From NCBI GenBank assembly GCA_013239625.1, contig MU057352.1, positions 31,565,277-31,629,276 of the forward strand: a stretch of DNA of 64,000 nucleotides, written 5' to 3'. The notes beneath the pieces were generated by a model. That model was not told the DNA's origin, did no database searches, and saw only the letters and a program-made list of their open reading frames with translations. Numbering within the stretch: the stretch's first letter is position 1; each line of letters opens with the position of its first letter. Both the position numbers and the translations under genes were made by a program. Origin of the DNA: Lama guanicoe. Taxonomy: Eukaryota. Positions 137 through 61,916 of this stretch are shown in pieces.

Positions 137-532
137 GGTCCACAGCTTCCCCTCCCTCGGGGGCCTGTGAGGGGACCGCGAGGGCCAGGCAGCCTCCCCA
201 AATCACAGCCCTGTGAGGTGCGCCTGAAGCCTCCAGGCAGGTGCCAGTGGCCCAGGGGAGCCAGCAGCTTAAGGAGCAGACCCTCCCGGCCAGGGATCCC
301 GCGCCTTGGACAGGCTCCTCAGGGGCCGTTTCAGAACTGCAGACCCAGGGGACCGTCTGTGTCTCGAATGTCCCCCAGAAGGTATAGAGCTCTGTCTAGG
401 GCTGTGTGGAGAACAGCCTGAGCTGTGGAGCCAGACAGATCTAACGACCGGTATGGAGGTATGATCTGGCCTCTGGCCTCGTGCCCCACTGCCTCGCCCA
501 GTGCCTCGCCCGCCACCCCACCGGCCACATAC

Positions 533-744
533 CTCCTTGATGTCATGGTACTGCCCGAGCAGGGCGTAGGGGCAGTAGGAGATGCTCATGGAGACAATGC
601 CCATGGTGCTGATCATGATCATGGCCACGTAGACATTGGCAAACATGGCCATCACAGCCGTGCCCACGGAGAAGCCCAGTGTCCCCAGCACGTAGATGAC
701 CCTGATACTCAGGTCGTAGTTGTCCAGGTACTTCTGGAGCAGGG
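533..744 (-). CDS. SLC45A4: SLC45A4 sixth coding exon (212 nt)
   Basis: CTGCAG|CC CTG CTC...ATC AAG GAG|GTATGT; encodes LLQKYLDNYDLSIRVIYVLGTLGFSVGTAVMAMFANVYVAMIMISTMGIVSMSISYCPYALLGQYHDIKE; phase 1/0. Confidence 0.96.
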
Positions 745-1194
745 CTGCAGAGACAGCGCAGCCACAGGACAGTGATGGATGTGCTCCCCTCCCTCCCCCC
801 ACCCCGCCCAGCCCATTTCCGTGGTGCTCAGCCTGGCTAGGGAACAGGCAACGCCCCTCTTCCCCACCCAGACCACGCACTGCCCACGCTGCAACGATGG
901 CCCCCACCCCCCAACATGCCTGCACTCCGCTTCCAGGGGCTCCAGCACCTCAGAGAGAAGGCAGCCCCCTTGGTCCCAGACCATAGTCTGGTCCTGTCCC
1001 ACAGCTCCCCGGGGCCTCCCTTGGATAACGGTGGCTTATCCTCAAGATGAGGATGGACGGTTCTCAAAGCTGCTGTACCTGCAGTACGGCCCCAACCAAT
1101 CCCAGCCCGCTGTCCACAGACCAGGATGCCCATCAGTCCTTCTAGTCACCAATCATGTTCAGGTGCGCCACTCACCTGACTGGGGGCCACTCAC

Positions 1195-1294
1195 CTGAGC
1201 AAATTGCACCAGTGGCCGCATAGATGACCAGGCCCCAGCAGCCCATCTTCACGCCTGCATTGTAGGCCTGCCAAGCCGTCGAGTTGGATGGGGC
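1195..1294 (-). CDS. SLC45A4: SLC45A4 fifth coding exon (100 nt)
   Basis: GAACAG|GCC CCA TCC AAC...TGC TCA G|GTGAGT; encodes APSNSTAWQAYNAGVKMGCWGLVIYAATGAICS; phase 0/1; not in the ORF track, read by hand. Confidence 0.95.
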
Positions 1295-2141
1295 CTGTTC
1301 CAGAAATGAGACTGGGGTTAGGGGGCAGAGACACCAGACTGAACCCTCTGGGCAAGGGAGGTTATTTTAACCTCGACCGCAGGCCAGCTGGTGACTCTAA
1401 GAGGTGGTGACACCATGTGGAGGAGACGCAGCCACGGTCCAGGTCAGTATCTGTGGCAGACTGTCTGCCACCTCCTCCCCCAGCTTCACTCCTTCCCCGT
1501 ATCTGGGTGGATCCGACTTGCAGCTCCTGCCTCTGCTCTCTCAGAGCCCAGCGGCCACATGGAGCAGCTTAGACGGGCCAGGAAGGTAGGAACACATGGA
1601 GTGGGGAGGCCTGAGCCTATGCCGCGGCCATCTCGGCCTTCCTGGACCGACCCCAGGCGATATGGCCATGGGTGTGAACCAGTGGACGCCACAGGTGCAC
1701 CCAGATGACCCGGCCCCAAGTAACGACAGATGGAGGCTTGGGTCGGGGGCAGCGTCAACAGGGTGAGAGCTGGCGTGGTGCCTCCCTGGCTCCTCCGTGG
1801 CCTGTGCTTGCGAGAGCCCAGGGGTTTCCTGCTGCTCTCATGCACTCCAGGTGTGTACCCACCCTCGGGCTCACACAGTGATGCCTAACCACATTGGCAG
1901 GGGTGCACACTGGCTGGCTGCCCGCCACGCGCCCCAGCCCGACATGCAAGGCCCGTGATCACCAACTCAGGTGCTGGGCTGGGGGAGGTGAGGGTGGCCA
2001 GGCCACCGTGGGGGAGGCCTTGGGCCACCATGCTGCCACCACTGCCCGGCTCCCCCAGGTCTCCTCTGGTCTGGACCTCACCACCGGTCGTGAATGCCAC
2101 CCGCCCCTCCCAGTGGCTGAACTAGGGGCCCTGGTGCTGAC

Positions 2142-3175
2142 CTTGGGGTCCCCCTCGAAGATGACCTGGCCCATGAAGTCGGTGTAGAACACTGCCTCCG
2201 CGATGACGGAGAACCAGGTGAGCAGGTGGCAAAGGCAGAGCCGCACCAACTCCTTGGGCATCTTCAGCATGGACAACCAGAGCAGCCGCACGGTGGTCTC
2301 CCCCTCGCCCTCCTCGCTCTCCGTGTCCCCGCTGGACGTGGTGGCCCCGCTCTGGTTGCGGCGCCGGCAGCGCTGCCGCTGCCGCTTCTGCAGGTCGTAG
2401 AGGTCGCTCATGCTGCGGGAGGGCTTGATCAGGACCACCGCGTTGGCCCGCCGGTAGCGGTAGCGGTGGGACCCGATCTTGCCGTAGTAGGAGAAGGTGC
2501 AGGAGGCCTGCCGGCGGAACATGTGTCTTCGCCGCCTGGCGCAGCTGGACGTGGCCGAGGGCTTCATGCCCACCCTGCCATAGCTGCCGAGGCCGTCGCA
2601 TGCGGGGGAGTGGCCCCCGTTGGGGAGCCCGCTCACACTGAGGTGGTTCTCGAGCAGGGTCTCGTCTTCCCTGGCGGGCTCCCTGAGCAGTGGCGGCAGG
2701 CCGGCTGGCCTGGCCCTGGCGAGCTCCTGGCTGGTGCTGCGGGGGGTGCTGGGGTAGGAGGCATCGTGGAAGATGGAAGGCTCGATGTCCTGCAGGAAGA
2801 GCAGCCCAGGCTCCAGGTCCAGGGCGGCGTCGGGCACGTGCAGCACCGAGTCGCTCTTGCTCCGTGCCATGCCCACGTCCAGGTAGTCCAGGGCCAGCTC
2901 GTGCTCCGACTGCACCTCATCTGGGAATAGGGCGCTGCCGTCCAGGATGCTGGCACGGGGGCCGGGGGCCGTGGCGTCGGCCACCTCCACGCCACGCTCC
3001 TGCTGGGGGCTGTGCTGCTCCTCCTCAATGCTGAACAGGTGCAGGGCCACCGATACCGTGAAGATGACGGCCGCGAAGAAGAAGAGCACCTGGTTCTGTG
3101 TCCGGAACCAGGTGCCCAGGAAGGTCTGGGTCCAGTCCAGCCCCCCCAGCACGTAGCCGATGGCCCCGCCAAGGC
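2142..3175 (-). CDS. SLC45A4: SLC45A4 fourth coding exon (1034 nt; TM5-6, large cytoplasmic loop, TM7)
   Basis: CCCACAG|GC CTT GGC...GAC CCC AAG|GTCAGC; frame of ORF 1959..3152; LGGAIGYVLGGLDWTQTFLG...FYTDFMGQVIFEGDPK; phase 1/0. Confidence 0.97.
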
Positions 3176-3683
3176 CTGTGGGACGGGAGGGGAAAAGCAG
3201 TCATGACCGATGCAGGTGCCTCCGCCCCGACAAGGGAGACTGGCCCGGAGGGGCGGCCAACCCTCCCTCGGGGGCCGGGGCCACCACTCAGAGTGAGAAA
3301 ACCGCAGGACAACAGAGGAACTGCAGCTGCCCCGAGGCTCTGCGTTCTCTGACCCCACGGACTCTCACCTAATAAGCCAGAGGCAGAGGACGGCAGCTGC
3401 TCCGTGTCTGCTCTCGGCATCAACTGCCACTGCAAGCTCGGAGTCCGTATTCCTCAAGGAGGTGTAAGCTGCTCGGCTAGGGCCCTGGGCTGTGGCCACT
3501 GGCTAGCATGTCCCCCCCACCCCAGACCACAGTCACTTGGGCCTGCTTGGGTCCCCGCTCACAGCCTCGCCCACCGAGGTCTGAGATGCAGCCACAGGCA
3601 GGGGTCACGGAAGCCACCCTGACCCTTGGGAGCAGCCTCCCCAACCCCGCCACCCTCCGACGGCCAGGCGAGGGCACACTTAC

Positions 3684-3863
3684 CGGCAGAGAAGGCGTGG
3701 ATGTTAAGGGCCATGTCCTGTTCCTCGCTGTCCACCACGTCCAGCAGGTAGGCGCGGATGGGCCCCTCGGTGGCGTCGGCGCTGAAATCCAGGACCACCA
3801 CTCCCAGCACCGTGAGGATGATGCCAATGGGCTGCCGGCTGGGGACATCGCCGAGGGACAGAC
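3684..3863 (-). CDS. SLC45A4: SLC45A4 third coding exon (180 nt)
   Basis: CTGTCAG|GT CTG TCC...TCT GCC G|GTAAGT; encodes LSLGDVPSRQPIGIILTVLGVVVLDFSADATEGPIRAYLLDVVDSEEQDMALNIHAFSA; phase 1/1. Confidence 0.97.
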
Positions 3864-5849
3864 CTGACAGGGCACAGAGGAGCAGTCCCATCTCAGCGCC
3901 CAAGTGCCACGGCGACCTCCCGGGAAGATGGCGACCCTCCGCCCAGCCAGCAGGGTGTGCTCCTCGGCACAGACGCTCCAGACAGAAGCTGACCTTTGTC
4001 GTTTCCAGGGTAACTTTTTCTCCCCCTTCACTTTAGCTGCTCGGTGAACCTCAAAGACCTTACTCACCATTACATTTTGTAACTGAAAATGGGGAAATGA
4101 TCCTTCCTGTCCAACCTTCACCAGGGGCCGTGCTGGGAGCGCTGACTCAGTGTCAGTGAGGAGGGGGCCTGAGACACACCTGGTCACTCGCGACACCTCT
4201 ATGCACACGGCATTAGAGGTCAAAGTCAGCTCCTCTGGGCGGGGGCCTCCACAGGGAGCCTGGGTGCGGGCTGGCCCAGGGTCTGCAAGTCGTTCGGCTG
4301 GTGCTTCCTGAACATGATGGGTTTTCCTGATTATCTGAGAGACACTTCCTTATCCGTACACTGTGGTTTCAGAGGAAGACTCTGCTTGAACGTGACTTCC
4401 TGAGCTACACAGGGAGCATGTGTCCATTTTCCAACTTGCTTTACAAAGAATTAAGCTTCCAGGACTACCACTGACCCAGGCCTCATGGCCAGACAGCATC
4501 CAAGGCACCGGGCTGGGCCAACGGCCACTGCGTCACACGCCGGTAGAGCCTCGAGCAGAAGCGAAATGACACCGAAACGACACCCATGCCTGCCCCTGGG
4601 AGTCTGTCAAGCTAGTTCACTGCACGGCCTGCCCTCCAGCAGGGTGCGGCTCTGAAGAGAGGTCAAAGGTCTTGCTTTTAGCACGAGTCCTCCCAAGGGG
4701 GTCGTAAGCACACAAGAGCAGCGATAATTACGCACCTGCTGCAGGTGAGTCTGCTCCTGAACCCAGAGACCAACCTGCTCCCCTGACAGCTGAGCTAAGG
4801 CTGGTTTACTGGACTCATTGCTGTGAACCGAGGACACTCTGCACAGAGGAGCTGAGGAGGCAGCTGGCTCGTTATTTGGGACCTAGGCTCTGCAGACAAG
4901 GCTGGTCACAGACAGACTGGCCCCACGTGAAAGAAGGAAAGGCATTCTGACCCGGGGCTCCCTGCTGGCTACCTCGACCCCACCGTGCCCAGGAGAAACA
5001 CAGGTAAAGGAAGAGACAGGCACCAGAGTGCAGGCTGGAGCTCCAAGCTGATGCCTCTGGGCCACAGTGGCTGGGGCCACCCTACAGGTACGTCCCTGAG
5101 AAAGCCATGGCGTTCCCTCTGAACTGAGCATGCAGGTGCCAGAAGGGCACCACCCCCTGGACTTCTGATCCAGAGATATCCAGCTGGGGAGGGGGCACAG
5201 CTCCTTGGCCGCCCCCACCACGCCTGGGAGCAAGCTCGCCCAGCTGGCCCCACACAGGCCTCGGAGGGGCCGAGAGGCTCCCACTGCACAGAAAGGTTTC
5301 CTCTGCGGCCCCTTCCCGAGCCTCCCAGCATCAGTGACCCCCACCTGAACTGACACAGACGTGGGACTTGCTCACATATGTCAGAACTCAGATTAAGCCT
5401 CCATCTTAAAAAGTTGTTGCCAGAAAACAGGATTCTGTTTTGAGCAGTTTTGATGGGTGCCCTCAAGACAAAAGCTCTTTCCCACATACAGTTGCTCTAA
5501 TTGAAAACAATACAAAACAAAACAAAACAAACCACGAGGACGTGAAACCAAAAACAAGATCAAATTAGGTCTGCACATTTTCAATACCAAGTCTAAGAAA
5601 AGGAGAAAAAAAAAGAAAAGATAATTTCTGAAATAATGCTGGAAACAGGACGTGGTGTCAGATACGCATTAAAAACAAACGGATCACAACAGGAAGCGCT
5701 CGCTGAGAACAGGTCCCCACGGCTTTCCCACGCGGGGCCCCGCTCGGCGCGGCCAGGCGTGCCCCGTCCAGGACCAGCCCGTCCAAAGGATGCAAGCCTG
5801 CACAACTCACGGAGGGAGAGCTGTCCCAGGCGGGGTGCAGGACACTCAC

Positions 5850-6038
5850 CTATGGCCGAGCCGTTAAGGAAAAGGGCCACTCCGAAGAGCACGCCCACGC
5901 AGAGCGCGAGGATGAAGGGCCGCCGGCGGCCCCAGCTCAGGGTGCACCGGTCACTCGCAGAGCCGATGAGAGGGGTGAAGATGAGGCCCAGGATGGGGCT
6001 CAGGAACCAGGTGAGGCTGTAGTACTGCTCCGGAAGGC
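5850..6038 (-). CDS. SLC45A4: SLC45A4 second coding exon (189 nt)
   Basis: TTGCAG|GC CTT CCG GAG...GCC ATA G|GTGAGT; encodes [62 protein letters not shown], with the SUT/SLC45 SDR...GRRRPF motif; phase 1/1. Confidence 0.97.
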
Positions 6039-26854: not shown

Positions 26855-27098
26855 CAATCTGCAGCAGGATGGGCGTGACCAGCGCCGTCTCCATGGCATA
26901 GCAGAACTCCCGGCCAAACATCACCGCCCCGTGCATCACCCACAGGCGCACAGGGATGCGGTCTATGGACCCCTCGCTGACGGTCTCATCCCGCGTCTCG
27001 GCCTCCGTGCCTCTGGGTTTCTGCTGGTCTGGCAGGGGCACCGGTAACTCCTGAACTTGCATAGACTCTGAGTCGGCGTTCTGCGGGGCCATTTTCAT
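26855..27098 (-). CDS. SLC45A4: SLC45A4 first coding exon, CDS part (81 codons + 1 nt; N-terminus and TM1)
   Basis: ATG at 27098 (GTG GTG ATG AAA ATG GCC) with an in-frame TAG upstream at 27131-27129; encodes MKMAPQNAD...[26 protein letters not shown]; donor G|GTAAGT after 26855. Confidence 0.96.
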
Positions 27099-27132
27099 CA
27101 CCACCGAAAAAATATATATATATTTACTCTAG

Positions 27133-27153
27133 CTATATAAATAATACTATCAT
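27133..27153 (-). promoter_or_regulatory. uORF4, hexapeptide MIVLFI*, ending 34 nt before the main ATG
   Basis: ATG ATA GTA TTA TTT ATA TAG; same frame as uORF1 and uORF3. Confidence 0.55.
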
Positions 27154-27159
27154 ATATCT

Positions 27160-27312
27160 TTAAGGATAAATTAAGACGTCTTCTCTTTCTGCTTCAGCTG
27201 TGTTCCTCTGGCAAGTAACACTTGTGTTCCTCCTTGTACAAACGGGGTCTTGAAACCTCTCACAATCAGACGAGACACGCAGCAAAGCGACGACTTTTGC
27301 TTGACGGCACAT
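27160..27312 (-). promoter_or_regulatory. uORF3, 50 aa (MCRQAKVVALLRVSSDCERFQDPVCTRRNTSVTCQRNTAEAEREDVLIYP*)
   Basis: ATG 27312 (context AGCCACATGT), TAA 27162-27160; same frame as uORF1. Confidence 0.6.
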
Positions 27313-27327
27313 GTGGCTTTTGCTGGT

Positions 27328-27474
27328 TTACTGTGAGTTAGAGTTAAAAATCCATAATTGCCATTCAGTTAATACCAGTTTCATCATCATTGCTGAAGAG
27401 GTGCTGACGCGCCTTTCCTTGCTACAGAGGGGTGGGAAGGTGACACACACAGGCGGTCCGCCGTCGCTCCCCAT
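27328..27474 (-). promoter_or_regulatory. uORF1, 48 aa (MGSDGGPPVCVTFPPLCSKERRVSTSSAMMMKLVLTEWQLWIFNSNSQ*), with internal ATGs at 27390/27387/27384
   Basis: Translated by hand from the reverse complement; ATG 27474, TAA 27330-27328. Translation in vivo is not shown. Confidence 0.6.
27344..27364 (-). promoter_or_regulatory. uORF2, hexapeptide MAIMDF* nested in uORF1 (different frame)
   Basis: ATG GCA ATT ATG GAT TTT TAA on the minus strand. Confidence 0.55.
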
Positions 27475-28433
27475 CGAGTGACCGGTGGGTCTGCAAGAGA
27501 GGAGAAGCCCCGCCCATCAGACGGCGCCTGCTGGCCTCCAGCCCCCACCTGCGGGCGCCCGTGCGGCTGACCCCTGGCCACTCAGGAAACCACGGACCTC
27601 TGTTCTCTGGTGCTCACCCGGGGTTGTCTGTGGCGAAAACAAAACTCAGCGTCTGGAGAGAGCATGTTCTCGTGTGTGGAACCAGTCCGGGGGCTAGGGG
27701 GGACAGACAGAGATGGGGCAGCAAAGGGAAGCTGGATGAGGGAAGAGGACACAGAAGGAGCTCAAAGCTTCTGCTCCGGGCCCTGGGGACCCCGCACAGG
27801 AAAGGTGTTAGCAGGGAGGGGGTGGAGGAGGAGGGGAAAGGGCAGGATGTGCACCTGCCCAGGGGAAGCTCAGAGTCCACCCTGGATTCCTGCTGTGGGC
27901 TGTCTACAGCCATGGTCCTTGACCTTCCTGCTAGGAGACCTTTTGATAATCAAATGAAAGTCATAACCCCTCTCCAGAAAAAAAAAAGTACCTGCACACC
28001 GAACACTAAACACCACGTCCAGGGGCTTGCAGACCCCAACCCCAATGCACACAGCATTCCAGGGGCTCTGGAACCTGTTCCCTAATCTTGTTTCCAGCAT
28101 CCTAGTACCTTGGACCCAGCTTCGTGCCCCATTCTCTGCCTGGATGAACACAGCACGTACGGCGTCGGCTGCCAAGACTCTAACTACAGCGTCCTTTAGG
28201 GAGGTTTCAGGAAAGCGATCATCGTCCCCGTGCGAGGCAAGACCAAGGATGCGGTTTTTCCCTCCCTCTTCTGCACGTGCACCTCCAGACAATGGGCTTC
28301 TGTTCAGTCTGAACTGTGTTAAAACAGGTAACCTTGAAATCGCACACAATGTGTTACATTTTTATATTAAGGTAGGTCTGTGGGTTGATAGCTTACCAAA
28401 AATTTTCAACAACTGGTTTAAATAAAAATACTT

Positions 28434-28945
28434 CTAAGCAACCTAAATGTCCATCAACAGATGACTGGATAAAGAAATTGTCACGTACACACACACACAC
28501 ACTGGAATACTAGTCAGCCATAAAAAAGAACGCAATAATGCCATTTGCAGCCACATGGACAAACCTGGAGACTGTCATACTAAGTGAAGTCAGACAGAGA
28601 AAGAAAAATACATGATATCACTCACATAAGGAATCTAAAAATTGAGACAAATGAACTTATTACAAAACAGAGACAAACTCAAACTCACAAACATAGGAAA
28701 CACTTGTGATTGCCAAGGGAGAAGGAGGGAGGGTGAACAGTTCAAGATTAGCAGATACCAACTACTGTATATAAAATAGATAAACAACAAGGTCCTACTG
28801 TATAGCACAGGGAACTATATTCAATACCTTGTAATAGCTTACAATGAGAAAGAATATGAAAAGTCATCTATATATAACGGAATCACTATGCTGTACACGA
28901 GAAATCAATACATTGTAACTGAATGTACTTTAGTAAAAATTTTTT
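28434..28945 (+). mobile_element. 5'-truncated L1 (ORF2 end + 3' UTR)
   Basis: aagcaacctaaatgtccatcaacagatgactggataaag...gcacagggaactatattcaatacc...cattgtaactgaatgtactttagtaaaaa. Confidence 0.9.
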
Positions 28946-57826: not shown

Positions 57827-58146
57827 ATGCGCAGCACAGTGTGTTTCTAAGCTGAAAGGATCTGAGAAGCTCGAGGGCACCACACCACCCAGCATGTGTC
57901 CAGCGCCCACCCCAGTCTGGCCTTGTCCCCCCCGCCCCGCTCTGGCACAGAGCCCCTGCCCCCCTCAGCTGTCCTGGCGGTTGTGAATGCGCAGCACAGT
58001 GTGTTTCTAAGCTGAAAGGATCTGAGAAGCTCGAGGGCACCACACCACCCAGCATGTGTCCAGCGCCCACCCCAGTCTGGCCTTGTCCCCCCCGCCCCTC
58101 CCTGGCACAGAGCCCCTGCCCCCCTCAGCTGTCCTGGCGGTTGTGA
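57827..58146. repeat. Tandem duplication, 2 x 160 bp, 2 mismatches
   Basis: Unit atgcgcagcacagt...ggcggttgtga starts at 57827 and 57987; copies differ only at ccccgctct vs cccctccct. Confidence 0.97.
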
Positions 58147-61732: not shown

Positions 61733-61916
61733 AAAACAGATAAACAATAAGGTCCAACTGTGTAGCCCAGGGAACTATATCCAATACACTGAAATAGCCT
61801 ATAATGAAATGGCATATGAAAAGGAATATACACATATTTACATGGACACCGGAATCACTGAGCTGTGCACTAGAAGCTAACACAACACTGTACATCAGCT
61901 ACACTTCAATTTAAAA
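61733..61916 (+). mobile_element. Short L1 3'-end insertion with degenerate target-site duplication
   Basis: aaacagataaacaataaggtcc...cagggaactatatccaat...ctacacttcaatttaaaa; flanks aaaaatgcattgcca / aaaacacgcgttgcca. Confidence 0.8.

What the first reader, a model, noticed from the sequence alone, without database searches (positions are those of the whole stretch)
27133..27474. Dense uORF array in the 5'UTR of a polyamine transporter: candidate polyamine-sensing translational switch
Seen: the 392-nt UTR part of the first coding exon has 8 upstream ATGs (27474, 27390, 27387, 27384, 27364, 27355, 27312, 27153). They form four uORFs of 48, 6, 50 and 6 aa. uORF1, 3 and 4 sit back-to-back in one frame, separated by 15 and 6 nt, and all stop before the main ATG. 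Established: SLC45A4 was recently reported to transport polyamines. Polyamine genes are often autoregulated in translation (AMD1 MAGDIS uORF, AZIN1 PPW/eIF5A uORF, OAZ1 frameshift, fungal transporter HOL1 MLLLPS* uORF). Inference: this array may be the mammalian equivalent, repressing transporter synthesis when polyamines are high. It could also explain the reported conservation of this exon's non-coding part. I know of no description of this for SLC45A4 but cannot search the literature.
Basis: partly seen in the sequence, partly recalled or inferred. Interest (0 to 1): 0.78.

Follow-up and report, generated by a model that had tools for sequence, protein, structure and literature searches.

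The report
Upstream ORFs in SLC45A4 leader exon
The non-coding start of the first coding exon of the polyamine transporter gene SLC45A4 does hold four small upstream reading frames, but their number is what chance gives and nothing found here shows that they sense polyamines.

Summary
On the minus strand, 392 nt of leader (27490-27099) hold 8 AUGs forming uORFs of 48, 6, 50 and 6 codons. All end before the start codon at 27098. The gene is SLC45A4.

The array is not denser than chance: 8 AUGs against 7.3 +/- 2.0 in shuffles, P = 0.45. Only the pair of uORFs of 48 codons or more is unusual (P about 0.005, post hoc).

Nothing points to a polyamine sensor. None of the motifs that define known polyamine-sensing uORFs (PPW, PS-stop, DIS-stop) is present. 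The uORFs lack the gene's coding signature. The leader shows no special fold and no Rfam match.

Conservation and ribosome data could not be reached.

Most likely this is an ordinary inhibitory multi-uORF leader. The exon (636 nt) also fits in size the published conserved single-exon circular RNA circSLC45A4 (641 nt in human), which is a rival reason for any conservation of its non-coding part.

The only printed "SLC45A4 uORF" mentions are misprints for SLC35A4. The polyamine switch remains an untested idea, at about 8%.

The parts
26855..27490 (-). First coding exon of SLC45A4 (636 nt): 392 nt of leader plus 244 nt of coding sequence
   Evidence: Acceptor AG at 27492-27491 after a pyrimidine tract; donor G|GTAAGT after 26855. 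Its first 48 aa match residues 1-47 of PDB SLC45A4 chains, E 2.6e-15. RNA runs hold 0.26-0.29 of the words of a 2001-nt query, against 0.307 expected for the whole exon.
27099..27490 (-). Leader (5'UTR) part of the exon. GC is 0.44 overall and falls to 0.21 in the last 56 nt. uORFs cover 321 of the 392 nt.
27328..27474 (-). uORF1, 48 codons plus TAA. Its AUG has U at -3 and G at +4 (weak to moderate context). It holds Pro-Pro at 27456 and 27435.
27382..27390 (-). ATGATGATG run. These are three in-frame internal AUGs of uORF1 with a purine at -3. With the next base, the run reads as three TGA stops in the frame of the main ORF.
27344..27364 (-). uORF2, 6 codons (MAIMDF) plus TAA, in another frame and nested inside uORF1. 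Both of its AUGs (27364, 27355) have a purine at -3 and G at +4, which is strong context.
27160..27312 (-). uORF3, 50 codons plus TAA. Its AUG has C at -3 and U at +4 (weak context). It ends Ile-Tyr-Pro-stop.
27133..27153 (-). uORF4, 6 codons (MIVLFI) plus TAG. Its AUG is in weak context, in the AT-rich tail of the leader. It ends 34 nt before the main AUG.
27090..27098 (-). Main start ATGAAAATG (Met-Lys-Met). The first AUG has G at -3 and A at +4. The second has A at -3 and G at +4.

Best explanation
The stretch is the 5' leader part of the first coding exon of SLC45A4.

In the linear mRNA its four AUG-uORFs most likely act as an ordinary, constitutive brake on translation.
- Six AUGs lie in the first 136 nt, and four of them have a purine at -3. 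Together they should capture most scanning ribosomes.
- The main AUG would then be reached by leaky scanning. It could also be reached by reinitiation after the two six-codon uORFs. uORF2 ends 245 nt before the main AUG and uORF4 ends 34 nt before it.
- All uORF stops lie at least 278 nt before the next exon junction, so uORF translation could also feed nonsense-mediated decay.

Shown here: the anatomy, the gene identity and the start-codon contexts. Inferred: that the uORFs are translated and repress.

No polyamine sensing is shown. The same exon fits in size the published conserved single-exon circular RNA of this gene. That would account for conservation of the non-coding part without any role for the uORFs.
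For: - Anatomy and start contexts.
[quoted passage not shown] The N-terminus from ATG 27098 matches residues 1-47, E 2.6e-15.
- ATG count at chance.
- No coding signature: third-position GC is 0.58 (uORF1) and 0.42 (uORF3), against 0.94 in the large coding exon.
- No Pfam family for either long uORF peptide, 0 of 2.
- No known polyamine-sensor motif in any of the 3 frames.
- No special fold: z = +0.72, and 74 of 100 shuffles fold at least as well. No Rfam match inside the leader.
- Circular RNA: hsa_circ_0001829 is a single-exon circle of 641 nt from SLC45A4 (passages of PMC12888668, and of the retracted PMC7731483). It is called highly conserved between human and mouse (passages of PMC11260338, and PMC10503630). 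Among the SLC45A4 exons seen in the window, only this one (636 nt) is near that size.
- Kozak context rules, the fall of reinitiation with uORF length, and the 50-55-nt decay rule are established knowledge, recalled.
Against: - No ribosome-footprint, transcript-end or conservation data could be obtained, so translation of the uORFs is inferred.
- Exon 1 was not located. The full leader and its distance from the cap are unknown.
- Two uORFs of at least 48 codons occur in only about 0.5% of shuffles. This could mean that the frames are kept open by selection.
- Weak-context starts on both long uORFs and a Pro-stop ending are also what a regulated stalling uORF would show.
- The papers seen call the circle's exon 'exon 1'. 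That it is this exon is my inference from size.
- No inverted repeats flank the exon within 14.5 kb on either side.
Confidence: 0.55

Rival explanations
1. This is the reader's hypothesis: a polyamine/eIF5A-sensing switch. When polyamines are high, ribosomes stall on a uORF, either at the Pro-stop end of uORF3 or at the Pro-Pro pairs of uORF1. Scanning ribosomes queue behind the stall, initiation at the weak uAUG rises, and less transporter is made.
For: - The host gene is a reported polyamine transporter (listing; passages of PMC12507699).
- HOL1 and AZIN1 work this way (passages of PMC11550727).
- uORF1 and uORF3 have weak-context AUGs.
- uORF3 ends in Pro-stop and is 150 nt long. uORF1 has two Pro-Pro pairs.
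- Two long uORFs are rare in shuffles.
Against: - No PPW, PS-stop or DIS-stop in any frame.
- The starts are AUG, not near-cognate.
- ATG count at chance.
- Conservation is untested.
- No paper links SLC45A4 translation to polyamines or eIF5A. In one search, 15 papers hold both words and 12 are listed, and none is on this topic by title. In passages of the SLC45A4 papers, UTR and translational control are absent.
Confidence: 0.08
2. The non-coding part of the exon matters mainly as part of the circular RNA circSLC45A4. That RNA is made by back-splicing of this single exon and has no known mechanism. On this reading the uORFs are incidental to whatever keeps the sequence.
For: - Size match of 636 against 641 nt.
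- The circle is described as highly conserved and functional in neural progenitors (passages; preprint of the Nat Commun paper).
- The flanking introns are long: intron 2 is 20.8 kb and intron 1 is over 36 kb.
Against: - The identity of the circle's exon is not stated in the passages seen.
- The primary paper (Suenkel 2020) is not held.
- No flanking inverted repeats were found.
- The linear mRNA still carries the uORFs, so the two readings can both hold.
Confidence: 0.2
3. A stress-responsive leader of the ATF4/GCN4 kind. After the tiny uORF2, ribosomes reinitiate. When eIF2 is phosphorylated they skip uORF3 and uORF4 and reach the main AUG more often.
For: - A six-codon uORF in strong context is followed by a long uORF 31 nt later. 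The main AUG lies 245 nt later.
Against: - No uORF overlaps the main start.
- uORF3 starts only 31 nt after the uORF2 stop and in weak context, so it would be skipped in any state.
- The only printed claim of a stress shift for 'SLC45A4' is a misprint for SLC35A4.
Confidence: 0.07
4. uORF1 or uORF3 encodes a functional small protein.
For: - Two ORFs of 48 and 50 codons are rare in shuffles.
Against: - Third-position GC is 0.58 and 0.42, against 0.94 in the gene's coding exon.
- 0 Pfam families for 2 peptides.
- Weak start contexts.
Confidence: 0.03

Closest known systems
HOL1 uORF of yeast (MLLLPS-stop), translational autoregulation of a polyamine transporter
   Same: A uORF in the leader of a polyamine transporter mRNA, with a leaky start. 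Here uORF3 has a proline next to the stop (passages of PMC11550727).
   Different: - HOL1 has one six-codon uORF with a conserved Pro-Ser-stop.
- Here no uORF ends in PS-stop, and the Pro-stop uORF is 50 codons long.
- The transporter families are unrelated.
- No polyamine response is shown here.
AZIN1 (and ODC) upstream conserved coding region with PPW
   Same: A uORF of about 50 codons, inefficient initiation and proline pairs. The length of the AZIN1 element is recalled.
   Different: - AZIN1 starts at a near-cognate codon and stalls at a conserved PPW (passages).
- Here the starts are AUG and no PPW exists.
AMD1 (SAM decarboxylase) hexapeptide uORF MAGDIS (recalled; listing only)
   Same: Two of the four uORFs are hexapeptides.
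   Different: Their sequences (MAIMDF, MIVLFI) lack the Asp-Ile-Ser end. They also do not lie next to the cap of this exon.
SLC35A4 leader with 11 uAUGs (Andreev 2015, PMC4383229, passages)
   Same: A transporter mRNA with a many-AUG leader. Most of those uAUGs are not conserved and the leader is strongly inhibitory.
   Different: - In SLC35A4 one 102-codon uORF is conserved, matches a Pfam family and is translated.
- Here the long uORFs have no family and no data on translation.
- Two papers print SLC45A4 where SLC35A4 is meant.
circSLC45A4 / hsa_circ_0001829
   Same: A single-exon circle of 641 nt from SLC45A4, against the 636-nt exon here. It is described as conserved between human and mouse.
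   Different: Not shown for this species. Which exon forms the circle was not seen in print. It is a separate RNA product, not a uORF mechanism.
hCMV UL4 uORF2 arrest peptide ending Pro-Pro-stop (recalled, no call)
   Same: A termination stall with peptidyl-tRNA-Pro. uORF3 ends Ile-Tyr-Pro-stop.
   Different: uORF3 has one proline, not two, and no evidence of a stall.

Membership tests
SLC45A4 gene (host of the leader) | The encoded protein matches SLC45A4, and the start codon matches residue 1 | tested here: met
   E 2e-172 to PDB 9giu_A/9ghz_A, residues 212-549; the first 48 aa match residues 1-47, E 2.6e-15.
HOL1-type polyamine-sensing uORF | Short uORF with a conserved C-terminal Pro-Ser-stop | tested here: not met
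   no PS-stop in any of 3 frames. The only Pro-stop is Tyr-Pro-stop of the 50-codon uORF3.
HOL1-type polyamine-sensing uORF | Inefficient (leaky) uORF start | tested here: met
   the uORF1 AUG has U at -3. The uORF3 AUG has C at -3 and U at +4. Weak context is common, so this alone says little.
HOL1-type polyamine-sensing uORF | Repression of the main ORF depends on polyamine level and eIF5A | not testable with these tools
   This needs reporters or footprints under DFMO, spermidine or GC7.
AZIN1/ODC upstream conserved coding region | Near-cognate start codon and a conserved PPW stall motif | tested here: not met
   all uORFs considered start at AUG; no PPW in any frame. Uncounted near-cognate uORFs were not surveyed beyond the motif scan.
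AZIN1/ODC upstream conserved coding region | Deep conservation of the uORF peptide | not testable with these tools
   No vertebrate genome collection is available. Supplements are closed.
AMD1 MAGDIS-type uORF | Hexapeptide ending Asp-Ile-Ser-stop (definition recalled) | tested here: not met
   the hexapeptides are MAIMDF and MIVLFI, and no DIS-stop exists.
ATF4/GCN4 delayed-reinitiation leader | A short permissive uORF followed by an inhibitory uORF. That second uORF overlaps the main start (ATF4) or blocks reinitiation. | tested here: inconclusive
   a six-codon uORF2 exists. No uORF overlaps the main AUG, and uORF3 starts only 31 nt after the uORF2 stop.
circSLC45A4 exon | Single SLC45A4 exon of about 641 nt | tested here: met
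   636 nt; the other exons seen are about 200, 200, 1040 and 270 nt; 641 nt in human.
circSLC45A4 exon | Back-splice junction reads joining the exon end to the exon start | not testable with these tools

The most novel reading that the evidence does not exclude
uORF3 is an eIF5A/polyamine-sensitive termination-stall element. It has a weak-context AUG, 50 codons (150 nt, about five ribosome lengths) and a Tyr-Pro-UAA end. When polyamines are high, a ribosome held at its stop builds a queue back to the weak AUG. This shuts off reinitiation at the SLC45A4 start. It would be the first translational feedback loop found on an animal polyamine transporter, working like yeast HOL1 through an unrelated peptide. 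Back-splicing of the same exon into circSLC45A4 would be a second switch that removes the start codon from the mRNA pool.
Probability: 0.07. Interest if true: 0.8.

Novelty: new member of a known kind. Interest (0 to 1): 0.3.

Why it matters
How animal cells regulate polyamine uptake is still being worked out. A 2026 preprint, seen in passages, says the main transporter and its regulation were unknown. It proposes antizyme control of ATP13A3. A polyamine-sensing leader on SLC45A4 would add a second, translational loop of the yeast HOL1 kind.

On present evidence, though, this is one more multi-uORF leader. About half of human mRNAs have uORFs (abstract start of PMC9648851, listing).

There is a practical point for anyone testing it. 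The exon probably also makes an abundant circular RNA. Conservation scores, RNA-seq depth and knock-down reagents over this exon therefore cannot be read as evidence about the uORFs alone.

Tried and rejected
- Cross-species conservation: no tool holds vertebrate genomes. Such uORFs are not annotated as proteins, and a blank would mean nothing.
- Known RNA element or structure in the leader: none.
- Tandem repeat in the AT-rich tail: none at score 30 or more.
- Leader derived from a repeat: no copy elsewhere in the window.
- Flanking inverted repeats that would drive circle formation: none at E <= 1e-5; the best match is 24 nt.
- Known peptide family: none.
- Prior print. 'SLC45A4'+'uORF' gives 2 papers and 'upstream open reading' gives 1. 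All cite Andreev 2015, whose text holds SLC45A4 0 times and SLC35A4 16 times. They were rejected as misprints.
- Further paper searches. 'SLC45A4'+'ribosome profiling' gives 3 papers: the same two plus one unrelated by title. 'SLC45A4'+'UTR' gives 47 papers, 25 listed, none on the 5' leader by title. 'SLC45A4'+'eIF5A' gives 15 papers, 12 listed, none on translation of SLC45A4 by title.
- Earlier notes of the scan: only this stretch read twice; the word searches added nothing.
- Exon 1 was not sought, because without reads it would be a guess.

Full report
**What is there.**
- The gene lies on the minus strand.
- A pyrimidine tract and an AG at 27492-27491 open an exon at 27490.
- The reading frame Met-Lys-Met-Ala-Pro starts at 27098.
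- The exon ends at 26855 before GTAAGT, in phase 1. The next exon starts at 6038 after ttgcag and completes the split glycine codon.
- The exon is therefore 636 nt: 392 nt of leader and 244 nt of coding sequence.

**Gene identity.**
- I searched exons apart and made no joined model, as the operators ask.
[quoted passage not shown] E is 2e-172 over chain residues 212-549.
- The first 48 residues from the ATG at 27098 match residues 1-47 of the same chains, E 2.6e-15. The start codon is therefore the one used in the solved protein.
- The Nature 2025 paper (PMC12507699; listing and passages) reports SLC45A4 as a neuronal polyamine transporter. It says that deleting exons 3-8 removes 89.64% of the mouse coding region. 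That fits a first coding exon carrying about a tenth of the protein.
- PMC12634670 (listing and passages) reports it as a putrescine transporter.
- In the passages returned for UTR, untranslated, translation and isoform, neither paper treats the leader.

**The observation.**
  - uORF1 has 48 codons (27474-27328).
  - uORF2 has 6 codons (27364-27344), in another frame and nested in uORF1.
  - uORF3 has 50 codons (27312-27160).
  - uORF4 has 6 codons (27153-27133).
- uORF1, 3 and 4 share a frame, with gaps of 15 and 6 nt. uORF4 ends 34 nt before the main ATG.
- No upstream ATG lies in the main frame. That frame holds eight stops in the leader.
- uORFs cover 321 of the 392 nt.

**Is it more than chance?**
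- Mostly not. 5000 dinucleotide-preserving shuffles of the leader give 7.27 +/- 1.97 ATGs, P(8 or more) = 0.45. All uORFs close before the main ATG in 41% of shuffles. A longest uORF of 50 codons or more appears in 13%.
- The leader runs from 0.68 GC at its 5' end to 0.21 at its 3' end. I therefore repeated the test with 20000 shuffles inside four blocks. These give 6.83 +/- 2.40 ATGs, P = 0.37, and a longest uORF of at least 50 codons in 12%.
- The one unusual measure is a second uORF of at least 48 codons, seen in about 0.5% of shuffles in both controls. I chose that statistic after seeing the data.
- So "dense" is true only against the usual depletion of AUGs in leaders (established knowledge), not against base composition.

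**Properties of the uORFs.**
- Start contexts.
  - The uORF1 AUG has U at -3 and G at +4.
  - The three internal AUGs (ATGATGATG, 27390-27382) have a purine at -3.
  - Both uORF2 AUGs have a purine at -3 and G at +4.
  - uORF3 has C at -3 and U at +4. uORF4 has U at -3 and A at +4.
  - The main AUG has G at -3 and A at +4. A second AUG two codons on has A at -3 and G at +4.
- Codon-position GC is 0.42/0.50/0.58 for uORF1 and 0.50/0.48/0.42 for uORF3. The gene's large exon has 0.63/0.47/0.94, so the uORFs lack the gene's coding signature.
- Neither long peptide matches a Pfam family, 0 of 2 at E up to 10.
- In all three frames of the leader there is no PPW, PS-stop, DIS-stop or IFI. uORF1 has two Pro-Pro pairs (27456, 27435). 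uORF3 ends Ile-Tyr-Pro-stop.
- The leader folds no better than shuffles: -94.3 against -98.5 +/- 5.8 kcal/mol, z = +0.72.
- Rfam gives four matches at E up to 1 in 27099-28100. All lie in the intron and all are below their gathering scores.
- There is no tandem repeat and no copy of the leader elsewhere in the window.

**RNA evidence.**
- For a 2001-nt query around the exon, four RNA runs of one study hold 0.26-0.29 of the sampled words. Four runs of a second study, guessed to be RNA, hold 0.23-0.28.
- The whole exon would give 0.307. An exon half as long would give about 0.14.
- This fits the full exon being present in RNA, but the tool does not say which words were held.
- So there is no read-level evidence on the splice joints, transcript starts, expression or a back-splice. 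I worked beside that stretch afterwards and sent none of its letters to any tool.

**How it most likely works.**
- By the established scanning model, a leader with six AUGs in its first 136 nt will stop most ribosomes before the main AUG. Four of those six have a purine at -3.
- Ribosomes that translate the 18- to 48-codon forms of uORF1 should rarely reinitiate.
- Those that translate the 3- or 6-codon uORF2 should resume scanning. They would pass the weak uORF3 AUG 31 nt later. They then have 245 nt to regain competence before the main AUG.
- All uORF stops lie at least 278 nt before the exon junction, so uORF translation may also expose the mRNA to nonsense-mediated decay (rule recalled).
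- All of this is inference from anatomy. I give it 0.55 as the main role of the array: an ordinary constitutive brake.

**The polyamine switch.**
- Passages of the review PMC11550727 describe the known cases.
  - AZIN1 has a uORF with a conserved PPW. Polyamines stall the ribosome there, and queued ribosomes raise uORF initiation.
  - HOL1 has a uORF with a conserved PS-stop that works likewise.
  - Andreev 2015 (passages) notes the AUU start of the AZIN1 uORF.
  - AMD1's MAGDIS is recalled. I saw only a listing in which the word occurs.
- None of these defining motifs is present here, so the array is not a member of any of those families.
- It could still work like them. The starts of uORF1 and uORF3 are weak. 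uORF3 ends with proline at the stop, where peptide release is slow and helped by eIF5A (recalled). It is also about five ribosome lengths long.
I checked its sequence claim, not its mechanism.
- With no conservation or footprint data I put this at about 0.08.

**A rival for "conservation of the non-coding part".**
- The SLC45A4 locus makes a circular RNA, circSLC45A4 (hsa_circ_0001829).
- Passages of PMC12888668 and of the retracted PMC7731483 give it as a single-exon circle of 641 nt.
- The primary paper (Suenkel 2020) is not held.
- Those papers say "exon 1". That the circle is the first coding exon is my inference. Among the exons I saw in the window, only this one is near 641 nt.
- If so, sequence constraint and RNA depth over this exon may owe more to the circle than to the uORFs.
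- I found no inverted repeats between 14.5 kb of the upstream intron and 14.9 kb of the downstream intron (0 hits at E <= 1e-5; best 24 nt). The usual driver of back-splicing is therefore not evident here.
- In a circle, the main frame would leave the exon end in phase 1 and re-enter the exon start. It would run 33 more sense codons and stop at the TGA at 27389-27387. The ATGATGATGA run thus reads as three stops in that frame.

**Literature on novelty.**
- 'SLC45A4' with 'uORF' gives 2 papers and with 'upstream open reading' gives 1.
- Both papers (PMC5758873 and bioRxiv 10.1101/106922; passages) say that SLC45A4 shifts between a uORF and the main ORF under arsenite, and both cite Andreev 2015.
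- That paper's text holds SLC45A4 0 times and SLC35A4 16 times. These are misprints.
- Searches with 'eIF5A', 'UTR' and 'ribosome profiling' list nothing on the leader by title. I could not open more papers after the cap.
- Supplementary lists of translated or conserved uORFs are closed and may name the gene.

**Verdict.**
- The most likely reading is an ordinary inhibitory multi-uORF leader on an exon that probably also forms a known circular RNA.
- It is a reasonable bench hypothesis, not a finding.

Noticed in passing
window 26855-27490 (-): If this exon circularises, the main frame re-enters the exon start. It runs 33 more sense codons and stops at the TGA at 27389-27387. That gives a circle-specific ORF of about 115 codons. 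The ATGATGATGA run supplies three stops in that frame.
   Followed up: partly
window 1-64000: The window is very poor in repeated DNA. Self-comparison with the exon left out found one interspersed pair (61733-61823 and 28773-28863; 83.5% over 91 nt). It also found one tandem duplication of 160 nt (57827-58146, 98.75%).
   Followed up: partly
window 27099-27155 (-): The last 56 nt of the leader have only 0.21 GC, in a gene whose coding third positions are 0.94 GC. This is an AT-rich island directly before the start codon, and uORF4 lies in it.
   Followed up: partly
window 27730-27914 (+): Sub-threshold Rfam match to the n-myc IRES model (25.7 bits against a gathering score of 40, E 2.6e-06). 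It lies in the intron upstream of the exon, on the strand opposite to the gene, and is probably due to composition.
   Followed up: no
window 27508-27515 (-): A GGGCGGGG box lies 16 nt before the acceptor, inside a stretch with CpG observed/expected of about 0.67-0.69. An internal transcription start close to the exon cannot be excluded, and it would change the leader.
   Followed up: no
window 500-6038 (-): Further SLC45A4 exons are visible as ORF pieces. Exon 3 runs from 6038. The others lie near 3680-3880, 2110-3152 and 500-770. Intron 2 is about 20.8 kb.
   Followed up: partly
literature (PMC5758873; bioRxiv 10.1101/106922): Both papers print SLC45A4 where the cited source (Andreev 2015) has SLC35A4. 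A text search for 'SLC45A4 uORF' therefore gives false prior art.
   Followed up: yes
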